From Schmidtea polychroa (Eukaryota): 64,000 bases of DNA. Each line of letters opens with the position of its first letter. Position 1 is the stretch's first letter. The notes under the pieces were generated by a model, which saw only the letters and a program-made list of their open reading frames with translations, did not search any database and was not told the DNA's origin. Both the position numbers and the translations under genes were made by a program. The DNA lies in NCBI GenBank assembly GCA_044892525.1, contig CM097885.1, positions 28,706,001 to 28,770,000 on the forward strand, written 5' to 3'. Below are positions 7,600-40,684 of the stretch, piece after piece.

Positions 7600-9400
7600 T
7601 AGCTTGGGCAAGACTAAGGTAAGCAAACCAGGCGAATGCGCCAATTGCCAGGCCCCTTTGAACAACTAAGACCCGAACGCTTGATGTGACAATTTCAATT
7701 ATTGTTGGAGTAGATGATTATAATGTTAAATTATTCTTAAGTTTGTGTACAGTGTAAATTTCTTTGTTCGAGTAGTGCGATATGATAAGGAAATGAGATC
7801 CGGAATATAATCTAAAATAGAGGGACAAGATAATGAGATACAGAATAATCAACAGTTCGTGGACCCAAGGGAATACTGGACAATTATAGTATACAGAATA
7901 TGCTCACTTTTTGCTAATACTCAAACCCTTGATACAGTACCAACGTTGATCACTCAACGAGTATGAAGTGGTCAAACTTCAATTGAATTTGGGTTACGCT
8001 GGAAACAGCACGAGGTAAAATTTTTGGTTACCTGTAACCCACTAATTGTTTGTATTCTGGATTACGAGTTTATGCTGAGAGGAATCACGTAATTACACCT
8101 TGGATCAAACACAAACATACTTGCATACGCTGACGATCTGGTCCTTAATTGCAAACACAGCACTTGACCTACAAACAATGACATTCAAATCTGAAAAATG
8201 TGGATACTACAGATATCGGAGAGACAATAGCTTTATGATAACTATCTGTAACAGTGCCCTCAAATTGACTCCATTAGCCTCTACATTTACCTGGGGTAGG
8301 GGCCAGAAGAAGCAGAATATATATCAAAATTGATCGACAGTGTCAAAGAAAAGGTCAAGAACAAAAGATAAAAGCACACAAAATATTTTCCCACTAAGTT
8401 TATATCCTCACTCAAGGGCGAATCAAATATAAAAAAGGACATAATTGAGTTCGATGACCACATAAGAATGAGATTAAAGAACATGTAATAAAACTACAAG
8501 CACACAGTCCATTCATGGATAACATAATATATGCTCCAAAAGAAAAAGGAGTACAATTAAAAAACTACCTGATGAATATCACATTCAAACAATATGCAGA
8601 ATGATGAAATTAATCATCAGCAGTCACACAACAATAAAAACATACTAACAGAACAACTAATCGACGTCACCAGGATAAGGAACCAACATCTTATAAAAAA
8701 TACAATGGACACCATTAAATGGTTAACAGAGCTATGTCCAGAATTCAAATGCCAAAACCACATGGATCACAAAGGTAAGAGAAACAATCATTCAACATTA
8801 CATTCAACGAAGAACAAATTTGCTGCTTGATATCAAGAAATATTCATCACAAAACTCATCTCAGAATCATTACACAAGTCTACTTGGACCACAAAAACTA
8901 GGAAGCAGCTAAATGAGAAAAATACATAATTAACCTAAGAATGTCTACACACATGGAATATAAACCCAGAAAACCTAATGGACCTAGAATGGAAATTCCT
9001 AATTCGAGCAAGACAAACAACAAAGCAATCACATCAAGGAACACAAAATGCCGGAAATTTAACGAAGAGGAGACTGCACCACATGTATTGAACCACTATG
9101 GAATTAACAACCAAAAATATAGACTTCACTTTTTAGACCTGATGTAGTGGTCCAAAAACTAAAAAGCGAATATGGACAAATATATACAAAACATTCTGTG
9201 TAGGGTCACTAGGAACTTGGAACAATGACATAATGCGTACACTATGCATTCACTACAAAGACATGAAAGCAAAAATGATATAAAAAATCCATACACAAGG
9301 GGTTTCACACTAGCTGAAGTACACAATTGAGCATCTAGAAAAACTAATATCAATTCACTTATTATGACTTCCCATAATTTGCTACCAATCTAGAGTAGCC
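7600..9400 (+). mobile_element. Degenerate non-LTR retrotransposon, probably RLE (R2/NeSL/R4-like) clade
   Basis: TNILAYADDLVL RT motif (~8110-8150); CRKFNEEETAPHVLNHY (decayed CCHC knuckle, ~9050-9100) followed by RPDVV-like PD motif; many stops and frameshifts. Confidence 0.7.
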
Positions 9401-9667
9401 TAAGACTACAGATTTTTTTCTGACAAAACATTAAATAAAAATACCTATTTAAATAGTAACCCATTAATAAAACATTTTTATTACAACTAAATCATTAACC
9501 ATTAAAAAGAAATTAGTAAATAAATTTAAATTACAAAGAATAAGATATTACTTAAAATAAAACAAAAGCAACAAAGAAACAATTTATTCACAAAAACAGG
9601 TTGATATATCTGAAAAGAATAAATTAGATAATATAACAAATTATATCAAAATATTCTAATTTCTAAT

Positions 9668-9728
9668 TTAATCAGCAAAATGATAGAATCATAAATCATA
9701 GAGATTCCTACTAAGTTTCATCACTGAT
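9668..9728 (-). ncRNA. SNORD79: Box C/D snoRNA, SNORD79 (U79)-like
   Basis: Box C GUGAUGA (9724-9718), guide AGUAGGAAUCUC antisense to LSU rRNA GAGAUUCC(U/C)ACU, D' AUGA, C'-like AUGAUU, box D CUGA (9675-9672), terminal complementarity AAUCAG/CUGAUU. Confidence 0.8.
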
Positions 9729-9871
9729 TGAACAAAAAATTAATTAAATAAATACATACCTTATAACTTCAGTTAACTTCAAGTTTGAATATTGATTCTA
9801 ATAAGTAAATATCTAAATCAATAATCTATTAATTTAATATTAACTAAATTTAAAATTTAAATTATTGATAA

Positions 9872-9935
9872 AGCTCAGTAAAAAACCGACTCATCAAATG
9901 CCTTTATGACTGGGGCGGTAAATGGTCATCATTAT
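9872..9935 (-). ncRNA. SNORD31: Box C/D snoRNA, SNORD31/snR67-like, copy 1
   Basis: Box C AUGAUGA (9932-9926), guide UACCGCCCCAGU antisense to LSU rRNA P-loop ACUGGGGCGGUA, D'-like CAUA, C' UGAUGA, box D CUGA (9878-9875). Confidence 0.85.
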
Positions 9936-10072
9936 AAAAATTTTAGTAACAATCGACTAAATACTCACCATATAAATCTTGAATGTTTGAATTCATATAA
10001 CAATCTGCGGATTAAAACCTAAGACATATATTAAATTTAAAATTAAATATATTAAAAATTTGTATTTTTAAT

Positions 10073-10133
10073 GGCTCAGTAAAACCGACTCATCAAATTC
10101 CTTTATGACTGGGGCGGTAAAAGGTCATCAGAA
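10073..10133 (-). ncRNA. SNORD31: Box C/D snoRNA, SNORD31/snR67-like, copy 2
   Basis: Box C UGAUGA (10130-10125), identical guide UACCGCCCCAGU, CAUA, C' UGAUGA, box D CUGA (10079-10076). Confidence 0.85.
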
Positions 10134-10729
10134 AGTTTTTATTAAAAAATTATAATTAATAAACTCACCAATTTCAAACAGAATTGACTAATCCTTTGAA
10201 ATTAAAAAAATGATTTTATTCTGTTATAACATGAGTATTCAAATCAGATAGCACTTCTAAAAATTATTCTTAAAATATATAACTAAAAAATAATTAAATA
10301 TTACTTAGATATAATTTAGAATTGATTTTTTAAAGCTATATCCTAAATGTTTAAAGACTTATTAAAACAACTTAATTTTTCACATACATTTATCATTTAA
10401 AATTATTTTTCAAACATTAAATATGAACTTTAATTATACTTGATTATAATTACACATTCTTTACACATTTTTACCAAATTTGAAAATATTTATATTTTAA
10501 TCGCGTATAAAAACATTTAAAATTTTCACTTGATTTAATTCAAAAAAATGAGTATTAAAATTTCAAAATTGTTTTATTTGTTTAATATCGTTGAATGAAT
10601 AAATATTAAATTTATCACTCTTTTAATTATTTAACATGGTGACCACAAACTTATTTCATTCAAGTATTCAGAAATTCGTTACAATGTTTTCCCTTTGACA
10701 CCCATCTTACAAATATAAATATAACTAAA

Positions 10730-10830
10730 TCTTTATGGAAAACATTCAATTCTTCTAACAGTGCTGCAAATTTTCTGTGATTTAATGATTTTGGTCGAAT
10801 AAAATTAACTATAGGTAAACAACGTTCATT
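10730..10830 (-). mobile_element. hAT transposase fragment
   Basis: IVNFIRPKSLNHRKFAALLEEL resembles the GTF2IRD2-type IVNxIRxxxLxxRQF motif also present in the intact 619-aa transposase. Confidence 0.6.
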
Positions 10831-10948
10831 ATCTTTTGAAGCTGTGGCACAACTCCTAAAGCTTCCTGGTATAGGAAAAAATGAAATAATATCATGAGAA
10901 ATATGACTGATAAAATTTGATAAATCCCTTAATTTTTTTAATCTTTAA

Positions 10949-12315
10949 CCCTTTGACACTCATAAGCGTTGCCGGCATTTTTATCGCTTGAAATATTAAT
11001 CAATCGACAGATTTTAGTCCATTAGTGAGTATTATTTTCAAAAAATAATTTATTCTTTATTTTTTAGACACTACCTGGGGTGGTACATAAATACACCACT
11101 AAGCGATAATATGCAAAATATCCAATCAGTCAATTATATGATAAAGTGAATAACACTGACGTTGAGCATTCAGACAGAGGTGAACATCACATGAACTGCA
11201 TTTAATGTTGCTGCGGCAATCATGTCTTCGGGTGCTGCAGTATGTGCATCGCTTTCTGTCTTCTGTGAATACTGGTAAATGTTGTGGTGTAGGACAAGCA
11301 GCATTACTCGGTCGAATTTTCTTTGAAAGAGGATTGGTGGATGTCGCTCTCTGATGACTACTGTAACGACCAGTGAGAGATAGCGCCACAGATCTGCGAA
11401 AGTCAAGAGCCTTCATTAGGTTGCCCTCATTTAGTTTCTTGAAAATGACATAGGAATTACACACACCAATATCCAGTAGGTCAAAGAAAATGCGTAAGTA
11501 GAACTTCACTTTTGACCTTTAAGTAAAAAAATCAAAACAAACAATGTATGTAGAGTTATAATGTGCACAGAGGCTGTAAATTTTTGCTTACCTTCGGTCG
11601 ATTCCATATGCCTCTTTTCGTTGATCTGCAATGTCAACACCTCCCATAATTGAATTATACGTCGAAACCATTTTTGGAACAGTTTTAGGCATTTTACCAG
11701 CCGTACCTCTTCGTCTTCTCATAACGTTCGTGGTTTCAAAAGGAGTCTCATAATTGGATAGAATAGTGACAGGACGTTTGTCCATCCACTTTATTGATGA
11801 GATACTGCCATTAGTGCTAACGTAAGAGTAAATATCACCCTCTTTCATACGCTTGTTAGCACGTACATCATCTGGCAAGTGTTTTCGTGATGTTCTGATA
11901 GTACCAATAGCTTGAACACCGTTTTCACGTAAATAGAAAAACAGCTCTACCGAGGAGAAGAAATTATCCATTGCCAGGATACAGTTTGTGTTGTGAAGAC
12001 TCTTTGCCAAATGCATTACCACACTTCCACCTAGACCAAATTGGCGACCTTCATTATAAACTTTGCCTTGATACATGTCAAGTTCATGAACATATCCAGA
12101 GTGTGATGATGCTCGGAACCACATTTTGAATCCCCAGGGTATGGGTTTTCCTTTGACGTACTGTTTCATTGCACTTTTCCCAGTGAACTTAATCATGTGT
12201 TCATCAATTGACATTTCATTTTCCATTTCCATTGCAGCTTGAAACGCTTTGTTGAAATGGTTTATTAGTGGACGTACTTTGTACGCTCTGTCGTATTCCG
12301 GATTGTCTTTATGAT
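10949..12315 (-). mobile_element. 5'-truncated piggyBac transposon (PGBD2/3-like) with intact 3' terminus
   Basis: TTAA (10945-10948) + CCCTTTGAC terminus; transposase core and Cys-rich C-terminal domain; no matching 5' TIR found. Confidence 0.9.
11126..12315 (-). CDS. piggyBac transposase (N-terminally truncated), two exons 11592-12315 and 11126-11516
   Basis: SIDEHM, AMDNFF, GGVDIADQ (DDD triad); 75-nt intron 11517-11591 (GTAAGC..TTAAAG) whose removal gives DRRSKVKFYLRIFFDLLD; C-terminal CTYC..CSSCDVHLC..C..H. Confidence 0.85.
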
Positions 12316-12480
12316 ATATCGTCGTAACTTGCTTGTCCATTCAGAGGCAACAACTCAATAAGCTTCTCACGTACTCCAGAAGATGAAAAGTATTTGGCAA
12401 CTACGCAACGCAGTGATATATCAGTGACAACCACAGATTCATCAACAGGTAGCGATAAATAATTAGCAGAGGTAATATCT
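12316..12480 (-). mobile_element. hAT transposase remnant directly joined to the piggyBac fragment
   Basis: SLPVDESVVVTDISLRCVVAKYFSSSGVREKLIELLPLNGQASYDDI corresponds to the hAT DES-TD..REELLxxLPxKGQTxGxDI segment. Confidence 0.7.
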
Positions 12481-40500: not shown

Positions 40501-40684
40501 NNNNNNNNNNNNNNNNNNNNNNNNNNNNNNNNNNNNNNNNNNNNNNNNNNNNNNNNNNNNNNNNNNNNNNNNNNNNNNNNNNNNNNNNNNNNNNNNNNNN
40601 NNNNNNNNNNNNNNNNNNNNNNNNNNNNNNNNNNNNNNNNNNNNNNNNNNNNNNNNNNNNNNNNNNNNNNNNNNNNNNNNNNNN
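40501..40684. other. Assembly gap (184 N)
   Basis: N run. Confidence 1.

What the first reader, a model, noticed from the sequence alone, without database searches (positions are those of the whole stretch)
9560..10390. Hidden non-coding, micro-exon snoRNA host gene invisible to the ORF track
Seen: the - strand carries 25-50 nt exons with strong GTGAGT/GTATGT donors, and the joined exons have stops in all three frames. Three consecutive introns are 150, 171 and 150 nt, versus 43-56 nt for ordinary introns in this window. Each holds one box C/D snoRNA whose D box lies ~57-77 nt upstream of the 3' splice site. Known: this is the architecture of GAS5/SNHG1(UHG)-type host genes, where the spliced RNA is disposable and the introns are the product. 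Inference: a lineage-specific host RNA that combines a GAS5-type guide (U79) with SNHG1-type guides (U31), in a genome that otherwise shrinks introns.
Basis: partly seen in the sequence, partly recalled or inferred. Interest (0 to 1): 0.85.

Follow-up and report, generated by a model that had tools for sequence, protein, structure and literature searches.

The report
Planarian non-coding snoRNA host gene
A compact gene of about 700 bases in a planarian genome appears to exist only to carry three ribosome-modifying guide RNAs in its introns, a design already known from the fly Uhg and human SNHG1/GAS5 genes, though its splicing is inferred here and not shown.

Summary
The sequence observation holds. 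On the minus strand, three GT..AG introns of 150, 171 and 150 nt each carry one box C/D snoRNA. They are separated by exons of 50 and 38 nt, and the joined exons have no ORF longer than 20 codons.

Two snoRNAs are SNORD31/snR67-like. Their 13-nt guide matches the genome's own 28S P-loop. The third is U79/Me28S-Am2634-like and its guide matches the species-specific CCUAC variant.

The genome is Schmidtea polychroa schPol2, identified by its assembly statistics.

Support for a Uhg/SNHG-type host gene is comparative. A paralogous locus, present as a 99.8% identical inverted pair, keeps the same order: a U31-like intron, an exon, then a U79-like intron. Its snoRNAs are 78-93% identical to the window's, while exons and intron flanks are at shuffled background. 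An unrelated array of four U27-like snoRNAs uses the same roughly 150-nt intron design. Across nine introns the 5' splice site lies 36-41 nt before the C box and the D box lies 57-77 nt before the 3' splice site.

Splicing itself was not shown. The only same-species RNA-like contig joins exon 1 to exon 2 with 51 unmatched letters in between and reads on into intron 2.

This is a new member of a known kind and of moderate interest. First-stage notes already flagged these snoRNAs on this same stretch.

The parts
10230..10282 (-). Promoter-proximal block conserved with the paralogue. It holds a TATA-like element followed by the 21-mer GAAGTGCYRTCTGATTTGAAT (10257-10237). The transcription start probably lies in or just after it.
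   Evidence: 43 of 53 positions are identical to the paralogue, while the downstream exon is not conserved. The exact 21-mer occurs only at the three host loci in 781 Mb. Its role as a promoter is inferred.
10169..10257 (-). Exon 1. The 3' end at 10169 is fixed by the GTGAGT donor. The 5' end is uncertain, between 10257 and 10206.
   Evidence: Donor position. A same-species RNA-like contig covers 10206-10167. The start site is not mapped.
10019..10168 (-). Intron 1, 150 nt, GTGAGT..TTAG
10076..10131 (-). sno1, a SNORD31/snR67-like box C/D snoRNA. From 5' to 3' it has a C box UGAUGA, guide UACCGCCCCAGU, degenerate D' box CAUA, C' box UGAUGA and D box CUGA.
   Evidence: Rfam hits to SNORD31 (E 0.048) and DdR13 (E 0.045), both below gathering. 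The guide makes 13 Watson-Crick pairs with the genome's own 28S. RNA-like contigs of related species cover 10078-10170, and 10081-10121 exactly.
9969..10018 (-). Exon 2, 50 nt
   Evidence: Covered by the same-species contig spanning 9955-10018.
9798..9968 (-). Intron 2, 171 nt, GTGAGT..TTAG
9875..9932 (-). sno2, a second SNORD31-like snoRNA, 93% identical to sno1 across the C-to-D core
   Evidence: Rfam hits to TtnuCD11 (E 0.008), SNORD31 (E 0.02) and DdR13 (E 0.023). Core identity.
9760..9797 (-). Exon 3, 38 nt
9610..9759 (-). Intron 3, 150 nt, GTATGT..TCAG
9672..9724 (-). sno3, a U79/Me28S-Am2634-like box C/D snoRNA. It has a C box GUGAUGA, guide UAGUAGGAAUCUC, D' box AUGA and D box CUGA.
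   Evidence: Rfam hit to snoMe28S-Am2634 at E 3.6, which is weak. The guide makes 12 Watson-Crick pairs plus one G-U with the genome's own 28S GAGAUUCCUACUG. Contigs of related species cover 9684-9733.
9560..9609 (-). Last exon, with AATAAA at 9588-9583. The 3' end is inferred.
   Evidence: Old dispersed repeats begin below about 9475.

Best explanation
This is a dedicated, non-protein-coding host gene for several snoRNAs, of the Uhg/SNHG1/GAS5 kind, in the planarian Schmidtea polychroa.

A short transcript of about 700 nt starts near 10257-10206 and ends near 9560 on the minus strand. It is spliced at three canonical introns. Each intron is a stereotyped unit of roughly 150 nt: 5' splice site, about 37 nt, a box C/D snoRNA of about 55 nt, about 60-75 nt, then the 3' splice site.

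snoRNP proteins assemble on the snoRNA during splicing, and exonucleases trim the excised intron down to the snoRNA. The two U31-like guides direct 2'-O-methylation of the 28S P-loop G (human Gm4166, E. coli G2251). The U79-like guide directs methylation of the A in CGAGA*UUCC (human Am3809). The spliced RNA of about 170-230 nt is a by-product.

Shown here: the snoRNAs and their rRNA complementarity, the canonical splice signals and fixed geometry, and the conservation pattern across paralogues. Inferred: the splicing itself, the start and end of the transcript, the processing route and the methylation.
For: - Boxes and guides: 13 Watson-Crick pairs with own 28S for sno1 and sno2, and 12 plus one G-U for sno3. 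Rfam's nearest families share the same guides.
- Paralogous locus: C1:235.51 Mb, with a 99.8% identical inverted copy at 235.46 Mb, has the same order of U31-like intron (158 nt), 45-nt exon and U79-like intron (153 nt). snoRNA cores are 91-93% and 78% identical. Exons and intron flanks are 55-65% identical against a shuffled mean of 50-58%. Donors and acceptors keep their positions.
- Independent array: four U27-like snoRNAs at C1:192.036 Mb show donors 37-40 nt before the C box, acceptors 59-67 nt after the D box, introns of about 148-155 nt and exons of 54-67 nt.
- Chance: strong donors occur at only 0.00066 per base, so one falling in a 6-nt positional window has probability of about 0.004 per intron.
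- Coding potential: the longest ATG ORF in the joined exons is 20 codons in the window and 21 in the paralogue, and neither is conserved.
- Surroundings: the unit sits in a unique interval bounded by a young transposon end at about 10943 and old repeats below about 9475, with no coding exons nearby.
- Position in the intron: the D box to 3' splice site distance fits the known preference for box C/D snoRNAs about 50 nt upstream of the branch point (PMC8162545).
- Transcription: a same-species RNA-like contig covers exons 1 and 2 only, which suggests the locus is transcribed.
Against: - No contig in the four runs laid shows any of the junctions 10169/10018, 9969/9797 or 9760/9609.
- The one same-species contig has 51 unmatched letters where intron 1 lies, and it continues 14 nt into intron 2. 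It is neither the predicted spliced form nor a plain unspliced copy of this haplotype.
- The runs are only guessed to be RNA, and contigs cannot show RNA ends.
- All Rfam matches are below gathering.
- No 5'TOP-like start is visible.
- The D' boxes are degenerate (CAUA, AUGA), and terminal stems are weak in four of five snoRNAs.
- Published planarian RiboMeth-seq lists no 28S site beyond about position 1600, so it does not cover the two predicted sites (PMC11649923).
Confidence: 0.72

Rival explanations
1. The three snoRNAs come from one unspliced polycistronic precursor, as in plants, yeast clusters or trypanosomes. Endonuclease and exonuclease cuts release them, and the GT..AG signals are not used.
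For: No spliced junction was seen. The same-species contig reads from exon 2 straight into intron 2. The snoRNAs repeat at a regular spacing of about 200 nt, like a cluster.
Against: Strong donors sit 36-41 nt before the C box in nine of nine introns across three unrelated snoRNA types. Their positions survive although the flanks have diverged to background. Acceptors with pyrimidine tracts lie 57-77 nt after each D box. This pattern has no role in a pathway without splicing.
Confidence: 0.1
2. The small exons belong to a larger gene. They would be an untranslated leader of a downstream coding gene or part of a longer non-coding RNA, so the snoRNAs sit in introns of an ordinary host.
For: Neither the start nor the end of the transcript is mapped. 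A weak donor-like GTAATA lies after the last exon near 9552.
Against: AATAAA lies at 9588-9583. Downstream DNA below about 9475 is old dispersed repeat, and the next minus-strand ORF is a hAT transposase 3.3 kb away. Upstream DNA beyond about 10943 is a young transposon. The paralogue shares only the promoter block and the snoRNA introns.
Confidence: 0.08
3. This copy is a redundant or polymorphic duplicate. The working genes are the paralogous pair at 235.5 Mb, and intron 1 with sno1 varies between S. polychroa lineages.
For: The same-species contig replaces the core of intron 1 with 51 other letters at breakpoints within 2 nt of the intron ends. The genome holds four U31-like and three U79-like copies.
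Against: All boxes and guides in the window copy are intact, and sno1 and sno2 stay 93% identical although their flanks are saturated. The locus appears in an RNA-like run. Redundancy is compatible with the main explanation and does not replace it.
Confidence: 0.1

Closest known systems
Drosophila Uhg genes (Uhg1, Uhg2 and others; Tycowski and Steitz 2001, as summarised in PMC4430873)
   Same: No recognisable ORF. Many short introns, each encoding a single snoRNA. Compact invertebrate introns. The snoRNAs are the product.
   Different: The fly genes have up to 16 introns, against three here. Uhg promoters carry Myc E-boxes, and none is seen here. The exons here are shorter, at 38-50 nt. Expression and splicing are shown in flies but not here.
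Human SNHG1 (UHG) and GAS5
   Same: Both are non-coding host genes for several snoRNAs, with one box C/D snoRNA per intron. SNORD31 lies in SNHG1 (PMC9696202). SNORD79 guides 28S Am3809 (PMC9696202), and I recall from my own knowledge that it lies in GAS5. Exons are poorly conserved.
   Different: The human hosts have 5'TOP starts and spliced RNAs of about 0.6-1.1 kb, and they keep the two guide sets apart. Here a U31-type and a U79-type guide share one host of about 700 nt, no TOP is visible, and the spliced RNA would be only about 170-230 nt.
SNORD31 / snR67 / AtU31 family (Rfam RF00089, clan CL00053)
   Same: Identical guide core ACCGCCCCAGU. Same target, the P-loop G (human Gm4166, yeast Gm2616; PMC3511168).
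   Different: The score is 22.6-24 bits against a gathering score of 40. The D' box is CAUA instead of CUGA, as in the Rfam consensus of C. elegans ceN63.
SNORD79 / Drosophila snoMe28S-Am2634 / AtsnoR44
   Same: The guide pairs with the 28S stretch GAGAUUCC. The predicted target is the A equivalent to human Am3809. I derived this from the spacing of the A3804, A3809 and C3820 sites listed in PMC3511168 and from the sequence.
   Different: Only a weak hit to the fly family (E 3.6) and none to SNORD79 at E up to 10. The 3' half of the RNA is not conserved even with the paralogue.

Membership tests
Box C/D snoRNA | C box RUGAUGA near the 5' end and D box CUGA near the 3' end, 50-100 nt apart | tested here: met
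   The C-to-D spans are 55, 57 and 52 nt. The C box context reads CUGAUGA, AUGAUGA and GUGAUGA, and all three end in CUGA.
Box C/D snoRNA | A guide of 10 or more nt complementary to rRNA, ending next to a D or D' box so that the fifth paired nucleotide is the target | tested here: met
   13 Watson-Crick pairs with own 28S at 2904-2916, and 12 Watson-Crick plus one G-U at 2602-2614, in my numbering from the Rfam model start. The D' boxes are degenerate (CAUA, AUGA).
Box C/D snoRNA | Reaches the curated Rfam score of a named family | tested here: not met
   No hit at gathering in the whole window. The best hits are 24-25 bits against thresholds of 40-70.
Box C/D snoRNA | A stable RNA of about 60-70 nt bound by fibrillarin, and methylation at the predicted site | not testable with these tools
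   Only contigs were available. Contigs from related species contain the snoRNA sequences with unlike flanks. Published planarian RiboMeth-seq lists no 28S site beyond about position 1600 (PMC11649923).
Non-coding multi-snoRNA host gene (Uhg/SNHG/GAS5 type) | Several consecutive introns, each with exactly one snoRNA | tested here: met
   Three of three introns in the window, two of two in the paralogue and four of four in the U27-like array, at the level of sequence signals.
Non-coding multi-snoRNA host gene (Uhg/SNHG/GAS5 type) | Exons without a meaningful or conserved ORF | tested here: met
   The longest ATG ORFs are 20 and 21 codons. Exon identity between paralogues (53-57%) is near the shuffled mean of about 50%.
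Non-coding multi-snoRNA host gene (Uhg/SNHG/GAS5 type) | snoRNAs conserved while exons drift | tested here: met
   snoRNA cores are 78-93% identical, against 55-65% for flanks and exons. The comparison is between paralogues, not species.
Non-coding multi-snoRNA host gene (Uhg/SNHG/GAS5 type) | A spliced, polyadenylated host RNA exists | tested here: inconclusive
   No predicted junction in four runs of contigs. One anomalous same-species contig was found. An RNA of about 200 nt is easily lost from standard libraries.
Non-coding multi-snoRNA host gene (Uhg/SNHG/GAS5 type) | 5'-terminal oligopyrimidine start (vertebrate hosts) | tested here: inconclusive
   No C followed by a pyrimidine run is seen between 10257 and 10206, but the start site is unmapped. 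The feature may not apply to flatworms.

The most novel reading that the evidence does not exclude
Planarian snoRNA host genes may be built from a strictly measured intron unit of about 150 nt. In it the snoRNA sits at a fixed distance from the 5' splice site (36-41 nt in nine introns of three unrelated guide types) as well as from the 3' splice site. This would imply that snoRNP assembly is gauged from both ends of a minimal intron. The window's family would also use its own conserved TATA-plus-21-mer promoter, with no TOP-type start visible. This would add a 5' spacing rule that, as far as I know, has not been described for the mammalian system, where only the distance to the branch point is reported to matter.
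Probability: 0.3. Interest if true: 0.5.

Novelty: new member of a known kind. Interest (0 to 1): 0.35.

Why it matters
snoRNA genes and their hosts are almost unannotated in flatworms. A 2009 homology survey of schistosomes found no unambiguous homologue of any known snoRNA apart from U3 (PMC2770079). My searches found no paper on planarian snoRNA host genes.

This locus, its paralogues and the U27-like array give concrete guide RNAs for three deeply conserved rRNA methylations in a regeneration model. In that model, knocking down fibrillarin changes rRNA methylation and translation (PMC11649923).

The very regular intron unit gives a simple search rule for finding the rest of the planarian snoRNA set. 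It also offers a small natural system for asking how intron size limits splicing-coupled snoRNP assembly.

The design itself has been known since the 1990s, so the general interest is moderate.

Tried and rejected
- **Rfam at gathering scores:** nothing in the whole window.
- **SNORD14 model over the whole genome:** nothing found, and the controls did not ring either, so this is uninformative.
- **RNA evidence:**
  - No run is recorded as RNA, and all data are contigs.
  - The short matches of related-species contigs at 10028-10066, 9518-9541, 11040-11062 and 9734-9758 fall in AT-rich low-complexity sequence. I treat them as spurious.
- **The 21-mer at two mismatches:** the hits (L012, L013) carry no snoRNAs. 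They fit my estimate of about four chance hits, so I rejected them as related loci.
- **U27 pattern hits on C4:** these lie in an 814-nt tandem repeat without C boxes, and are chance matches.
- **SNORD43-like guide pattern:** a pattern aimed at 18S Cm1638 gave five hits, none of them a convincing snoRNA.
- **Second guides:** the elements upstream of the D boxes have no convincing rRNA target.
- **Antisense 12-mers to rRNA across the window:** apart from the three snoRNAs these are mostly AT-rich chance matches. The 13-mer at 2157-2169 has no proper C box.
- **Myc E-box in the promoter region:** none.
- **Terminal or external stems:** significant only for the paralogue's U79-like copy.
- **Two classic papers:** PMC60799 and PMC109273 are not held.

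Full report
**What is there**

On the minus strand of 9560-10260 there are three box C/D snoRNAs.
- sno1 (10131-10076) and sno2 (9932-9875) share the guide UACCGCCCCAGU, a C' box UGAUGA and a D box CUGA. Their C-to-D cores are 93% identical.
- sno3 (9724-9672) has the guide UAGUAGGAAUCUC.

Rfam finds nothing at its curated thresholds. With relaxed thresholds the best matches for sno1 and sno2 are SNORD31, Dictyostelium DdR13, Tetrahymena TtnuCD11 and C. elegans ceN63. All share this guide, with E values of 0.008-0.05. For sno3 the best match is Drosophila snoMe28S-Am2634, at E 3.6.

**The targets are real**

I took an rDNA unit from the same genome and delimited 18S, 5.8S and 28S with Rfam.
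- The sno1 and sno2 guide forms 13 Watson-Crick pairs with 28S ACUGGGGCGGUAC.
- The sno3 guide forms 12 Watson-Crick pairs and one G-U with GAGAUUCCUACUG. That stretch carries the U where, from my own recall of the sequence, human 28S has a C, so the guide fits the host's own rRNA.

With the D' boxes read as CAUA and AUGA, the fifth-nucleotide rule gives two targets.
- The second G of GGGG in the P-loop. This is equivalent to human Gm4166 and yeast Gm2616, guided by U31 and snR67 (PMC3511168).
- The A of CGAGA*UUCC. This is equivalent to human Am3809, guided by U79 (PMC3511168, PMC9696202). The register is my inference from the spacing of the listed sites A3804, A3809 and C3820.

The guide elements next to the D boxes have no convincing target.

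**Gene structure**

Each snoRNA sits in its own GT..AG intron of 150, 171 or 150 nt, and the intervening exons are 50 and 38 nt.
- The C box begins 38, 37 and 36 nt after the 5' splice site.
- The D box ends 57, 77 and 62 nt before the 3' splice site.
- The joined exons, about 227 nt if transcription starts at 10257, have no ATG ORF above 20 codons.
- AATAAA lies at 9588-9583.
- The unit sits in a unique interval. A young transposon with many 99% identical copies ends near 10943, and old repeats begin below about 9475. No coding exon lies nearby on this strand.

**Which genome**

The assembly has 781,270,316 bases in 1012 contigs, and contig C2 is 189,691,935 bases long. Table 1 of PMC11410931 lists Schmidtea polychroa schPol2 with 781,290,622 bp, 1013 contigs and an N50 of 189,691,935. 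I take the genome to be that planarian. Its ordinary short introns are 44-66 nt in CCT chaperonin genes, so the snoRNA introns are about three times the minimal size.

**Comparative support**

A whole-genome search found a paralogous locus at C1:235,508,5xx on the plus strand. A 99.8% identical inverted copy lies about 49 kb away.

The paralogue has the same order: a U31-like snoRNA in a 158-nt intron, a 45-nt exon, then a U79-like snoRNA in a 153-nt intron. Its donors lie 41 and 39 nt before the C box, and its acceptors 63 and 60 nt after the D box.

| Segment compared with the window | Identity |
|---|---|
| U31-like snoRNA core | 91-93% |
| U79-like snoRNA core | 78% |
| Intron flanks and exons | 55-65% (shuffled mean 50-58%) |

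So the snoRNAs, the splice signals and their spacing have been kept while everything else drifted. This is the signature of a gene whose introns are the product.

A 53-nt block upstream (10282-10230) is also conserved, at 43 of 53 positions. It holds a TATA-like element and the 21-mer GAAGTGCYRTCTGATTTGAAT. The exact 21-mer occurs only at these three loci. I read the block as the core promoter and start region, which is an inference.

**An independent locus with the same design**

A pattern built from the host's 18S start, aimed at the equivalent of human 18S Am27, found four tandem U27-like snoRNAs at C1:192.036 Mb, spaced 202-221 nt apart.
- Donors lie 37-40 nt before the C box.
- Acceptors lie 59-67 nt after the D box.
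- Introns are about 148-155 nt, and exons are 54-67 nt.

Nine introns of three unrelated guide types therefore share one geometry. Strong donor hexamers occur at only 0.00066 per base in the window. This argues strongly that the introns are real and that the design is general in this genome.

The 3' distance agrees with the reported preference for box C/D snoRNAs about 50 nt upstream of the branch point (PMC8162545). The tight 5' distance is something I have not seen described. It may simply reflect selection for the shortest workable intron.

**RNA evidence is inconclusive**

No run is recorded as RNA, and all data are assembled contigs.

In the one same-species RNA-like run (X6), a single 155-nt contig lies on the locus. 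It matches 10206-10167, then has 51 letters that match nothing in 8900-11100, then matches 10018-9955. It therefore links exon 1 to exon 2, with breakpoints within 2 nt of the ends of intron 1. It is not the clean junction 10169/10018, and it runs 14 nt into intron 2.

The simplest reading is an allele or lineage with a different intron 1, sampled as unspliced RNA. I could not see the 51 letters, and this stays unexplained.

No X6 contig covers the snoRNAs, and none shows the other junctions. A spliced RNA of about 200 nt would be poorly captured by standard libraries, so its absence is weak evidence.

Contigs from two related species labels contain the sno1 core (10081-10121 exactly; 10078-10170 with 11 differences) and the 5' half of sno3 (9684-9733), with unlike flanks. 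This shows that the guides are conserved in relatives and present in their data.

**Comparison with known systems**

Drosophila Uhg genes have no recognisable ORF and up to 16 introns, each coding for a single snoRNA (PMC4430873). Human SNHG1 hosts SNORD22 and SNORD25-31 (PMC9696202). From my own knowledge, GAS5 hosts SNORD79.

The pairing of a U31-type guide with a U79-type guide in one host is real, and it predates the duplication of the locus. It is nonetheless what the constrained-drift view of snoRNA mobility between hosts predicts (PMC3511168).

Against the vertebrate definition, no 5'TOP start is visible, and splicing and polyadenylation are untested. I found no paper describing snoRNA host genes in planarians. 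A 2009 survey found no unambiguous homologue of any known snoRNA other than U3 in schistosomes (PMC2770079).

**Verdict**

- It is a new member of a known kind.
- First-stage notes s1-244370 and s1-244419 had already flagged the same snoRNAs on this stretch, and my tests agree with both.

Noticed in passing
L034:1066-1752 (G000:C1:192,035,9xx-192,036,7xx, minus strand): Four tandem U27-like box C/D snoRNAs lie about 202-221 nt apart. Their guide GAUAAGCAUAUG pairs with the 5' end of 18S. Each sits in its own roughly 150-nt GT..AG intron between exons of 54-67 nt. This looks like a second, unrelated non-coding host gene.
   Followed up: partly
L011:1501-2130 and L010 (G000:C1:235,508,550-235,509,1xx plus strand; 235,459,3xx-235,459,751 minus strand): This is a paralogue of the window's host gene, with one U31-like and one U79-like intron. 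It is present as an inverted pair about 49 kb apart and 99.8% identical over 1.8 kb, which points to a recent segmental duplication.
   Followed up: partly
window 9955-10206: A 155-nt contig of same-species run X6 carries 51 letters that match nothing nearby, in place of the core of intron 1. The breakpoints fall at the intron's ends. This may be a structural polymorphism of the intron that carries sno1.
   Followed up: partly
window 10237-10257 (minus strand): The 21-mer GAAGTGCYRTCTGATTTGAAT is exactly conserved at the three host loci and found nowhere else in 781 Mb. Its function is unknown. It may mark the transcription start or a binding site.
   Followed up: partly
window 10943-12340 (minus strand): A piggyBac-type transposon fragment with ORFs at 11126-11509 and 11588-12340. 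Its terminal 180 nt has 39 other copies at 96-99% identity among the 40 matches listed, on all four chromosomes. A 2226-nt contig of the RNA-like run X6 covers it, so the family looks young and possibly active.
   Followed up: no
G000, many contigs (C1, C2, C3, C21, C97, C115, C202 and others): About 880 matches to an 18-nt stretch of 28S, at up to one mismatch. Most lie in arrays with a period of 13-20 kb on several chromosomes and on unplaced contigs. A few isolated copies lie on chromosome arms, for example C1:26.7 Mb and C1:70.1 Mb.
   Followed up: no
L037:1051-2700 (G000:C4:19.03 Mb): A tandem repeat with an 814-nt unit. It matched the U27 guide pattern by chance and contains no snoRNA.
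   Followed up: no
window 40501-40684: A run of 184 N, either an assembly gap or masked sequence. I left it as it is.
   Followed up: no
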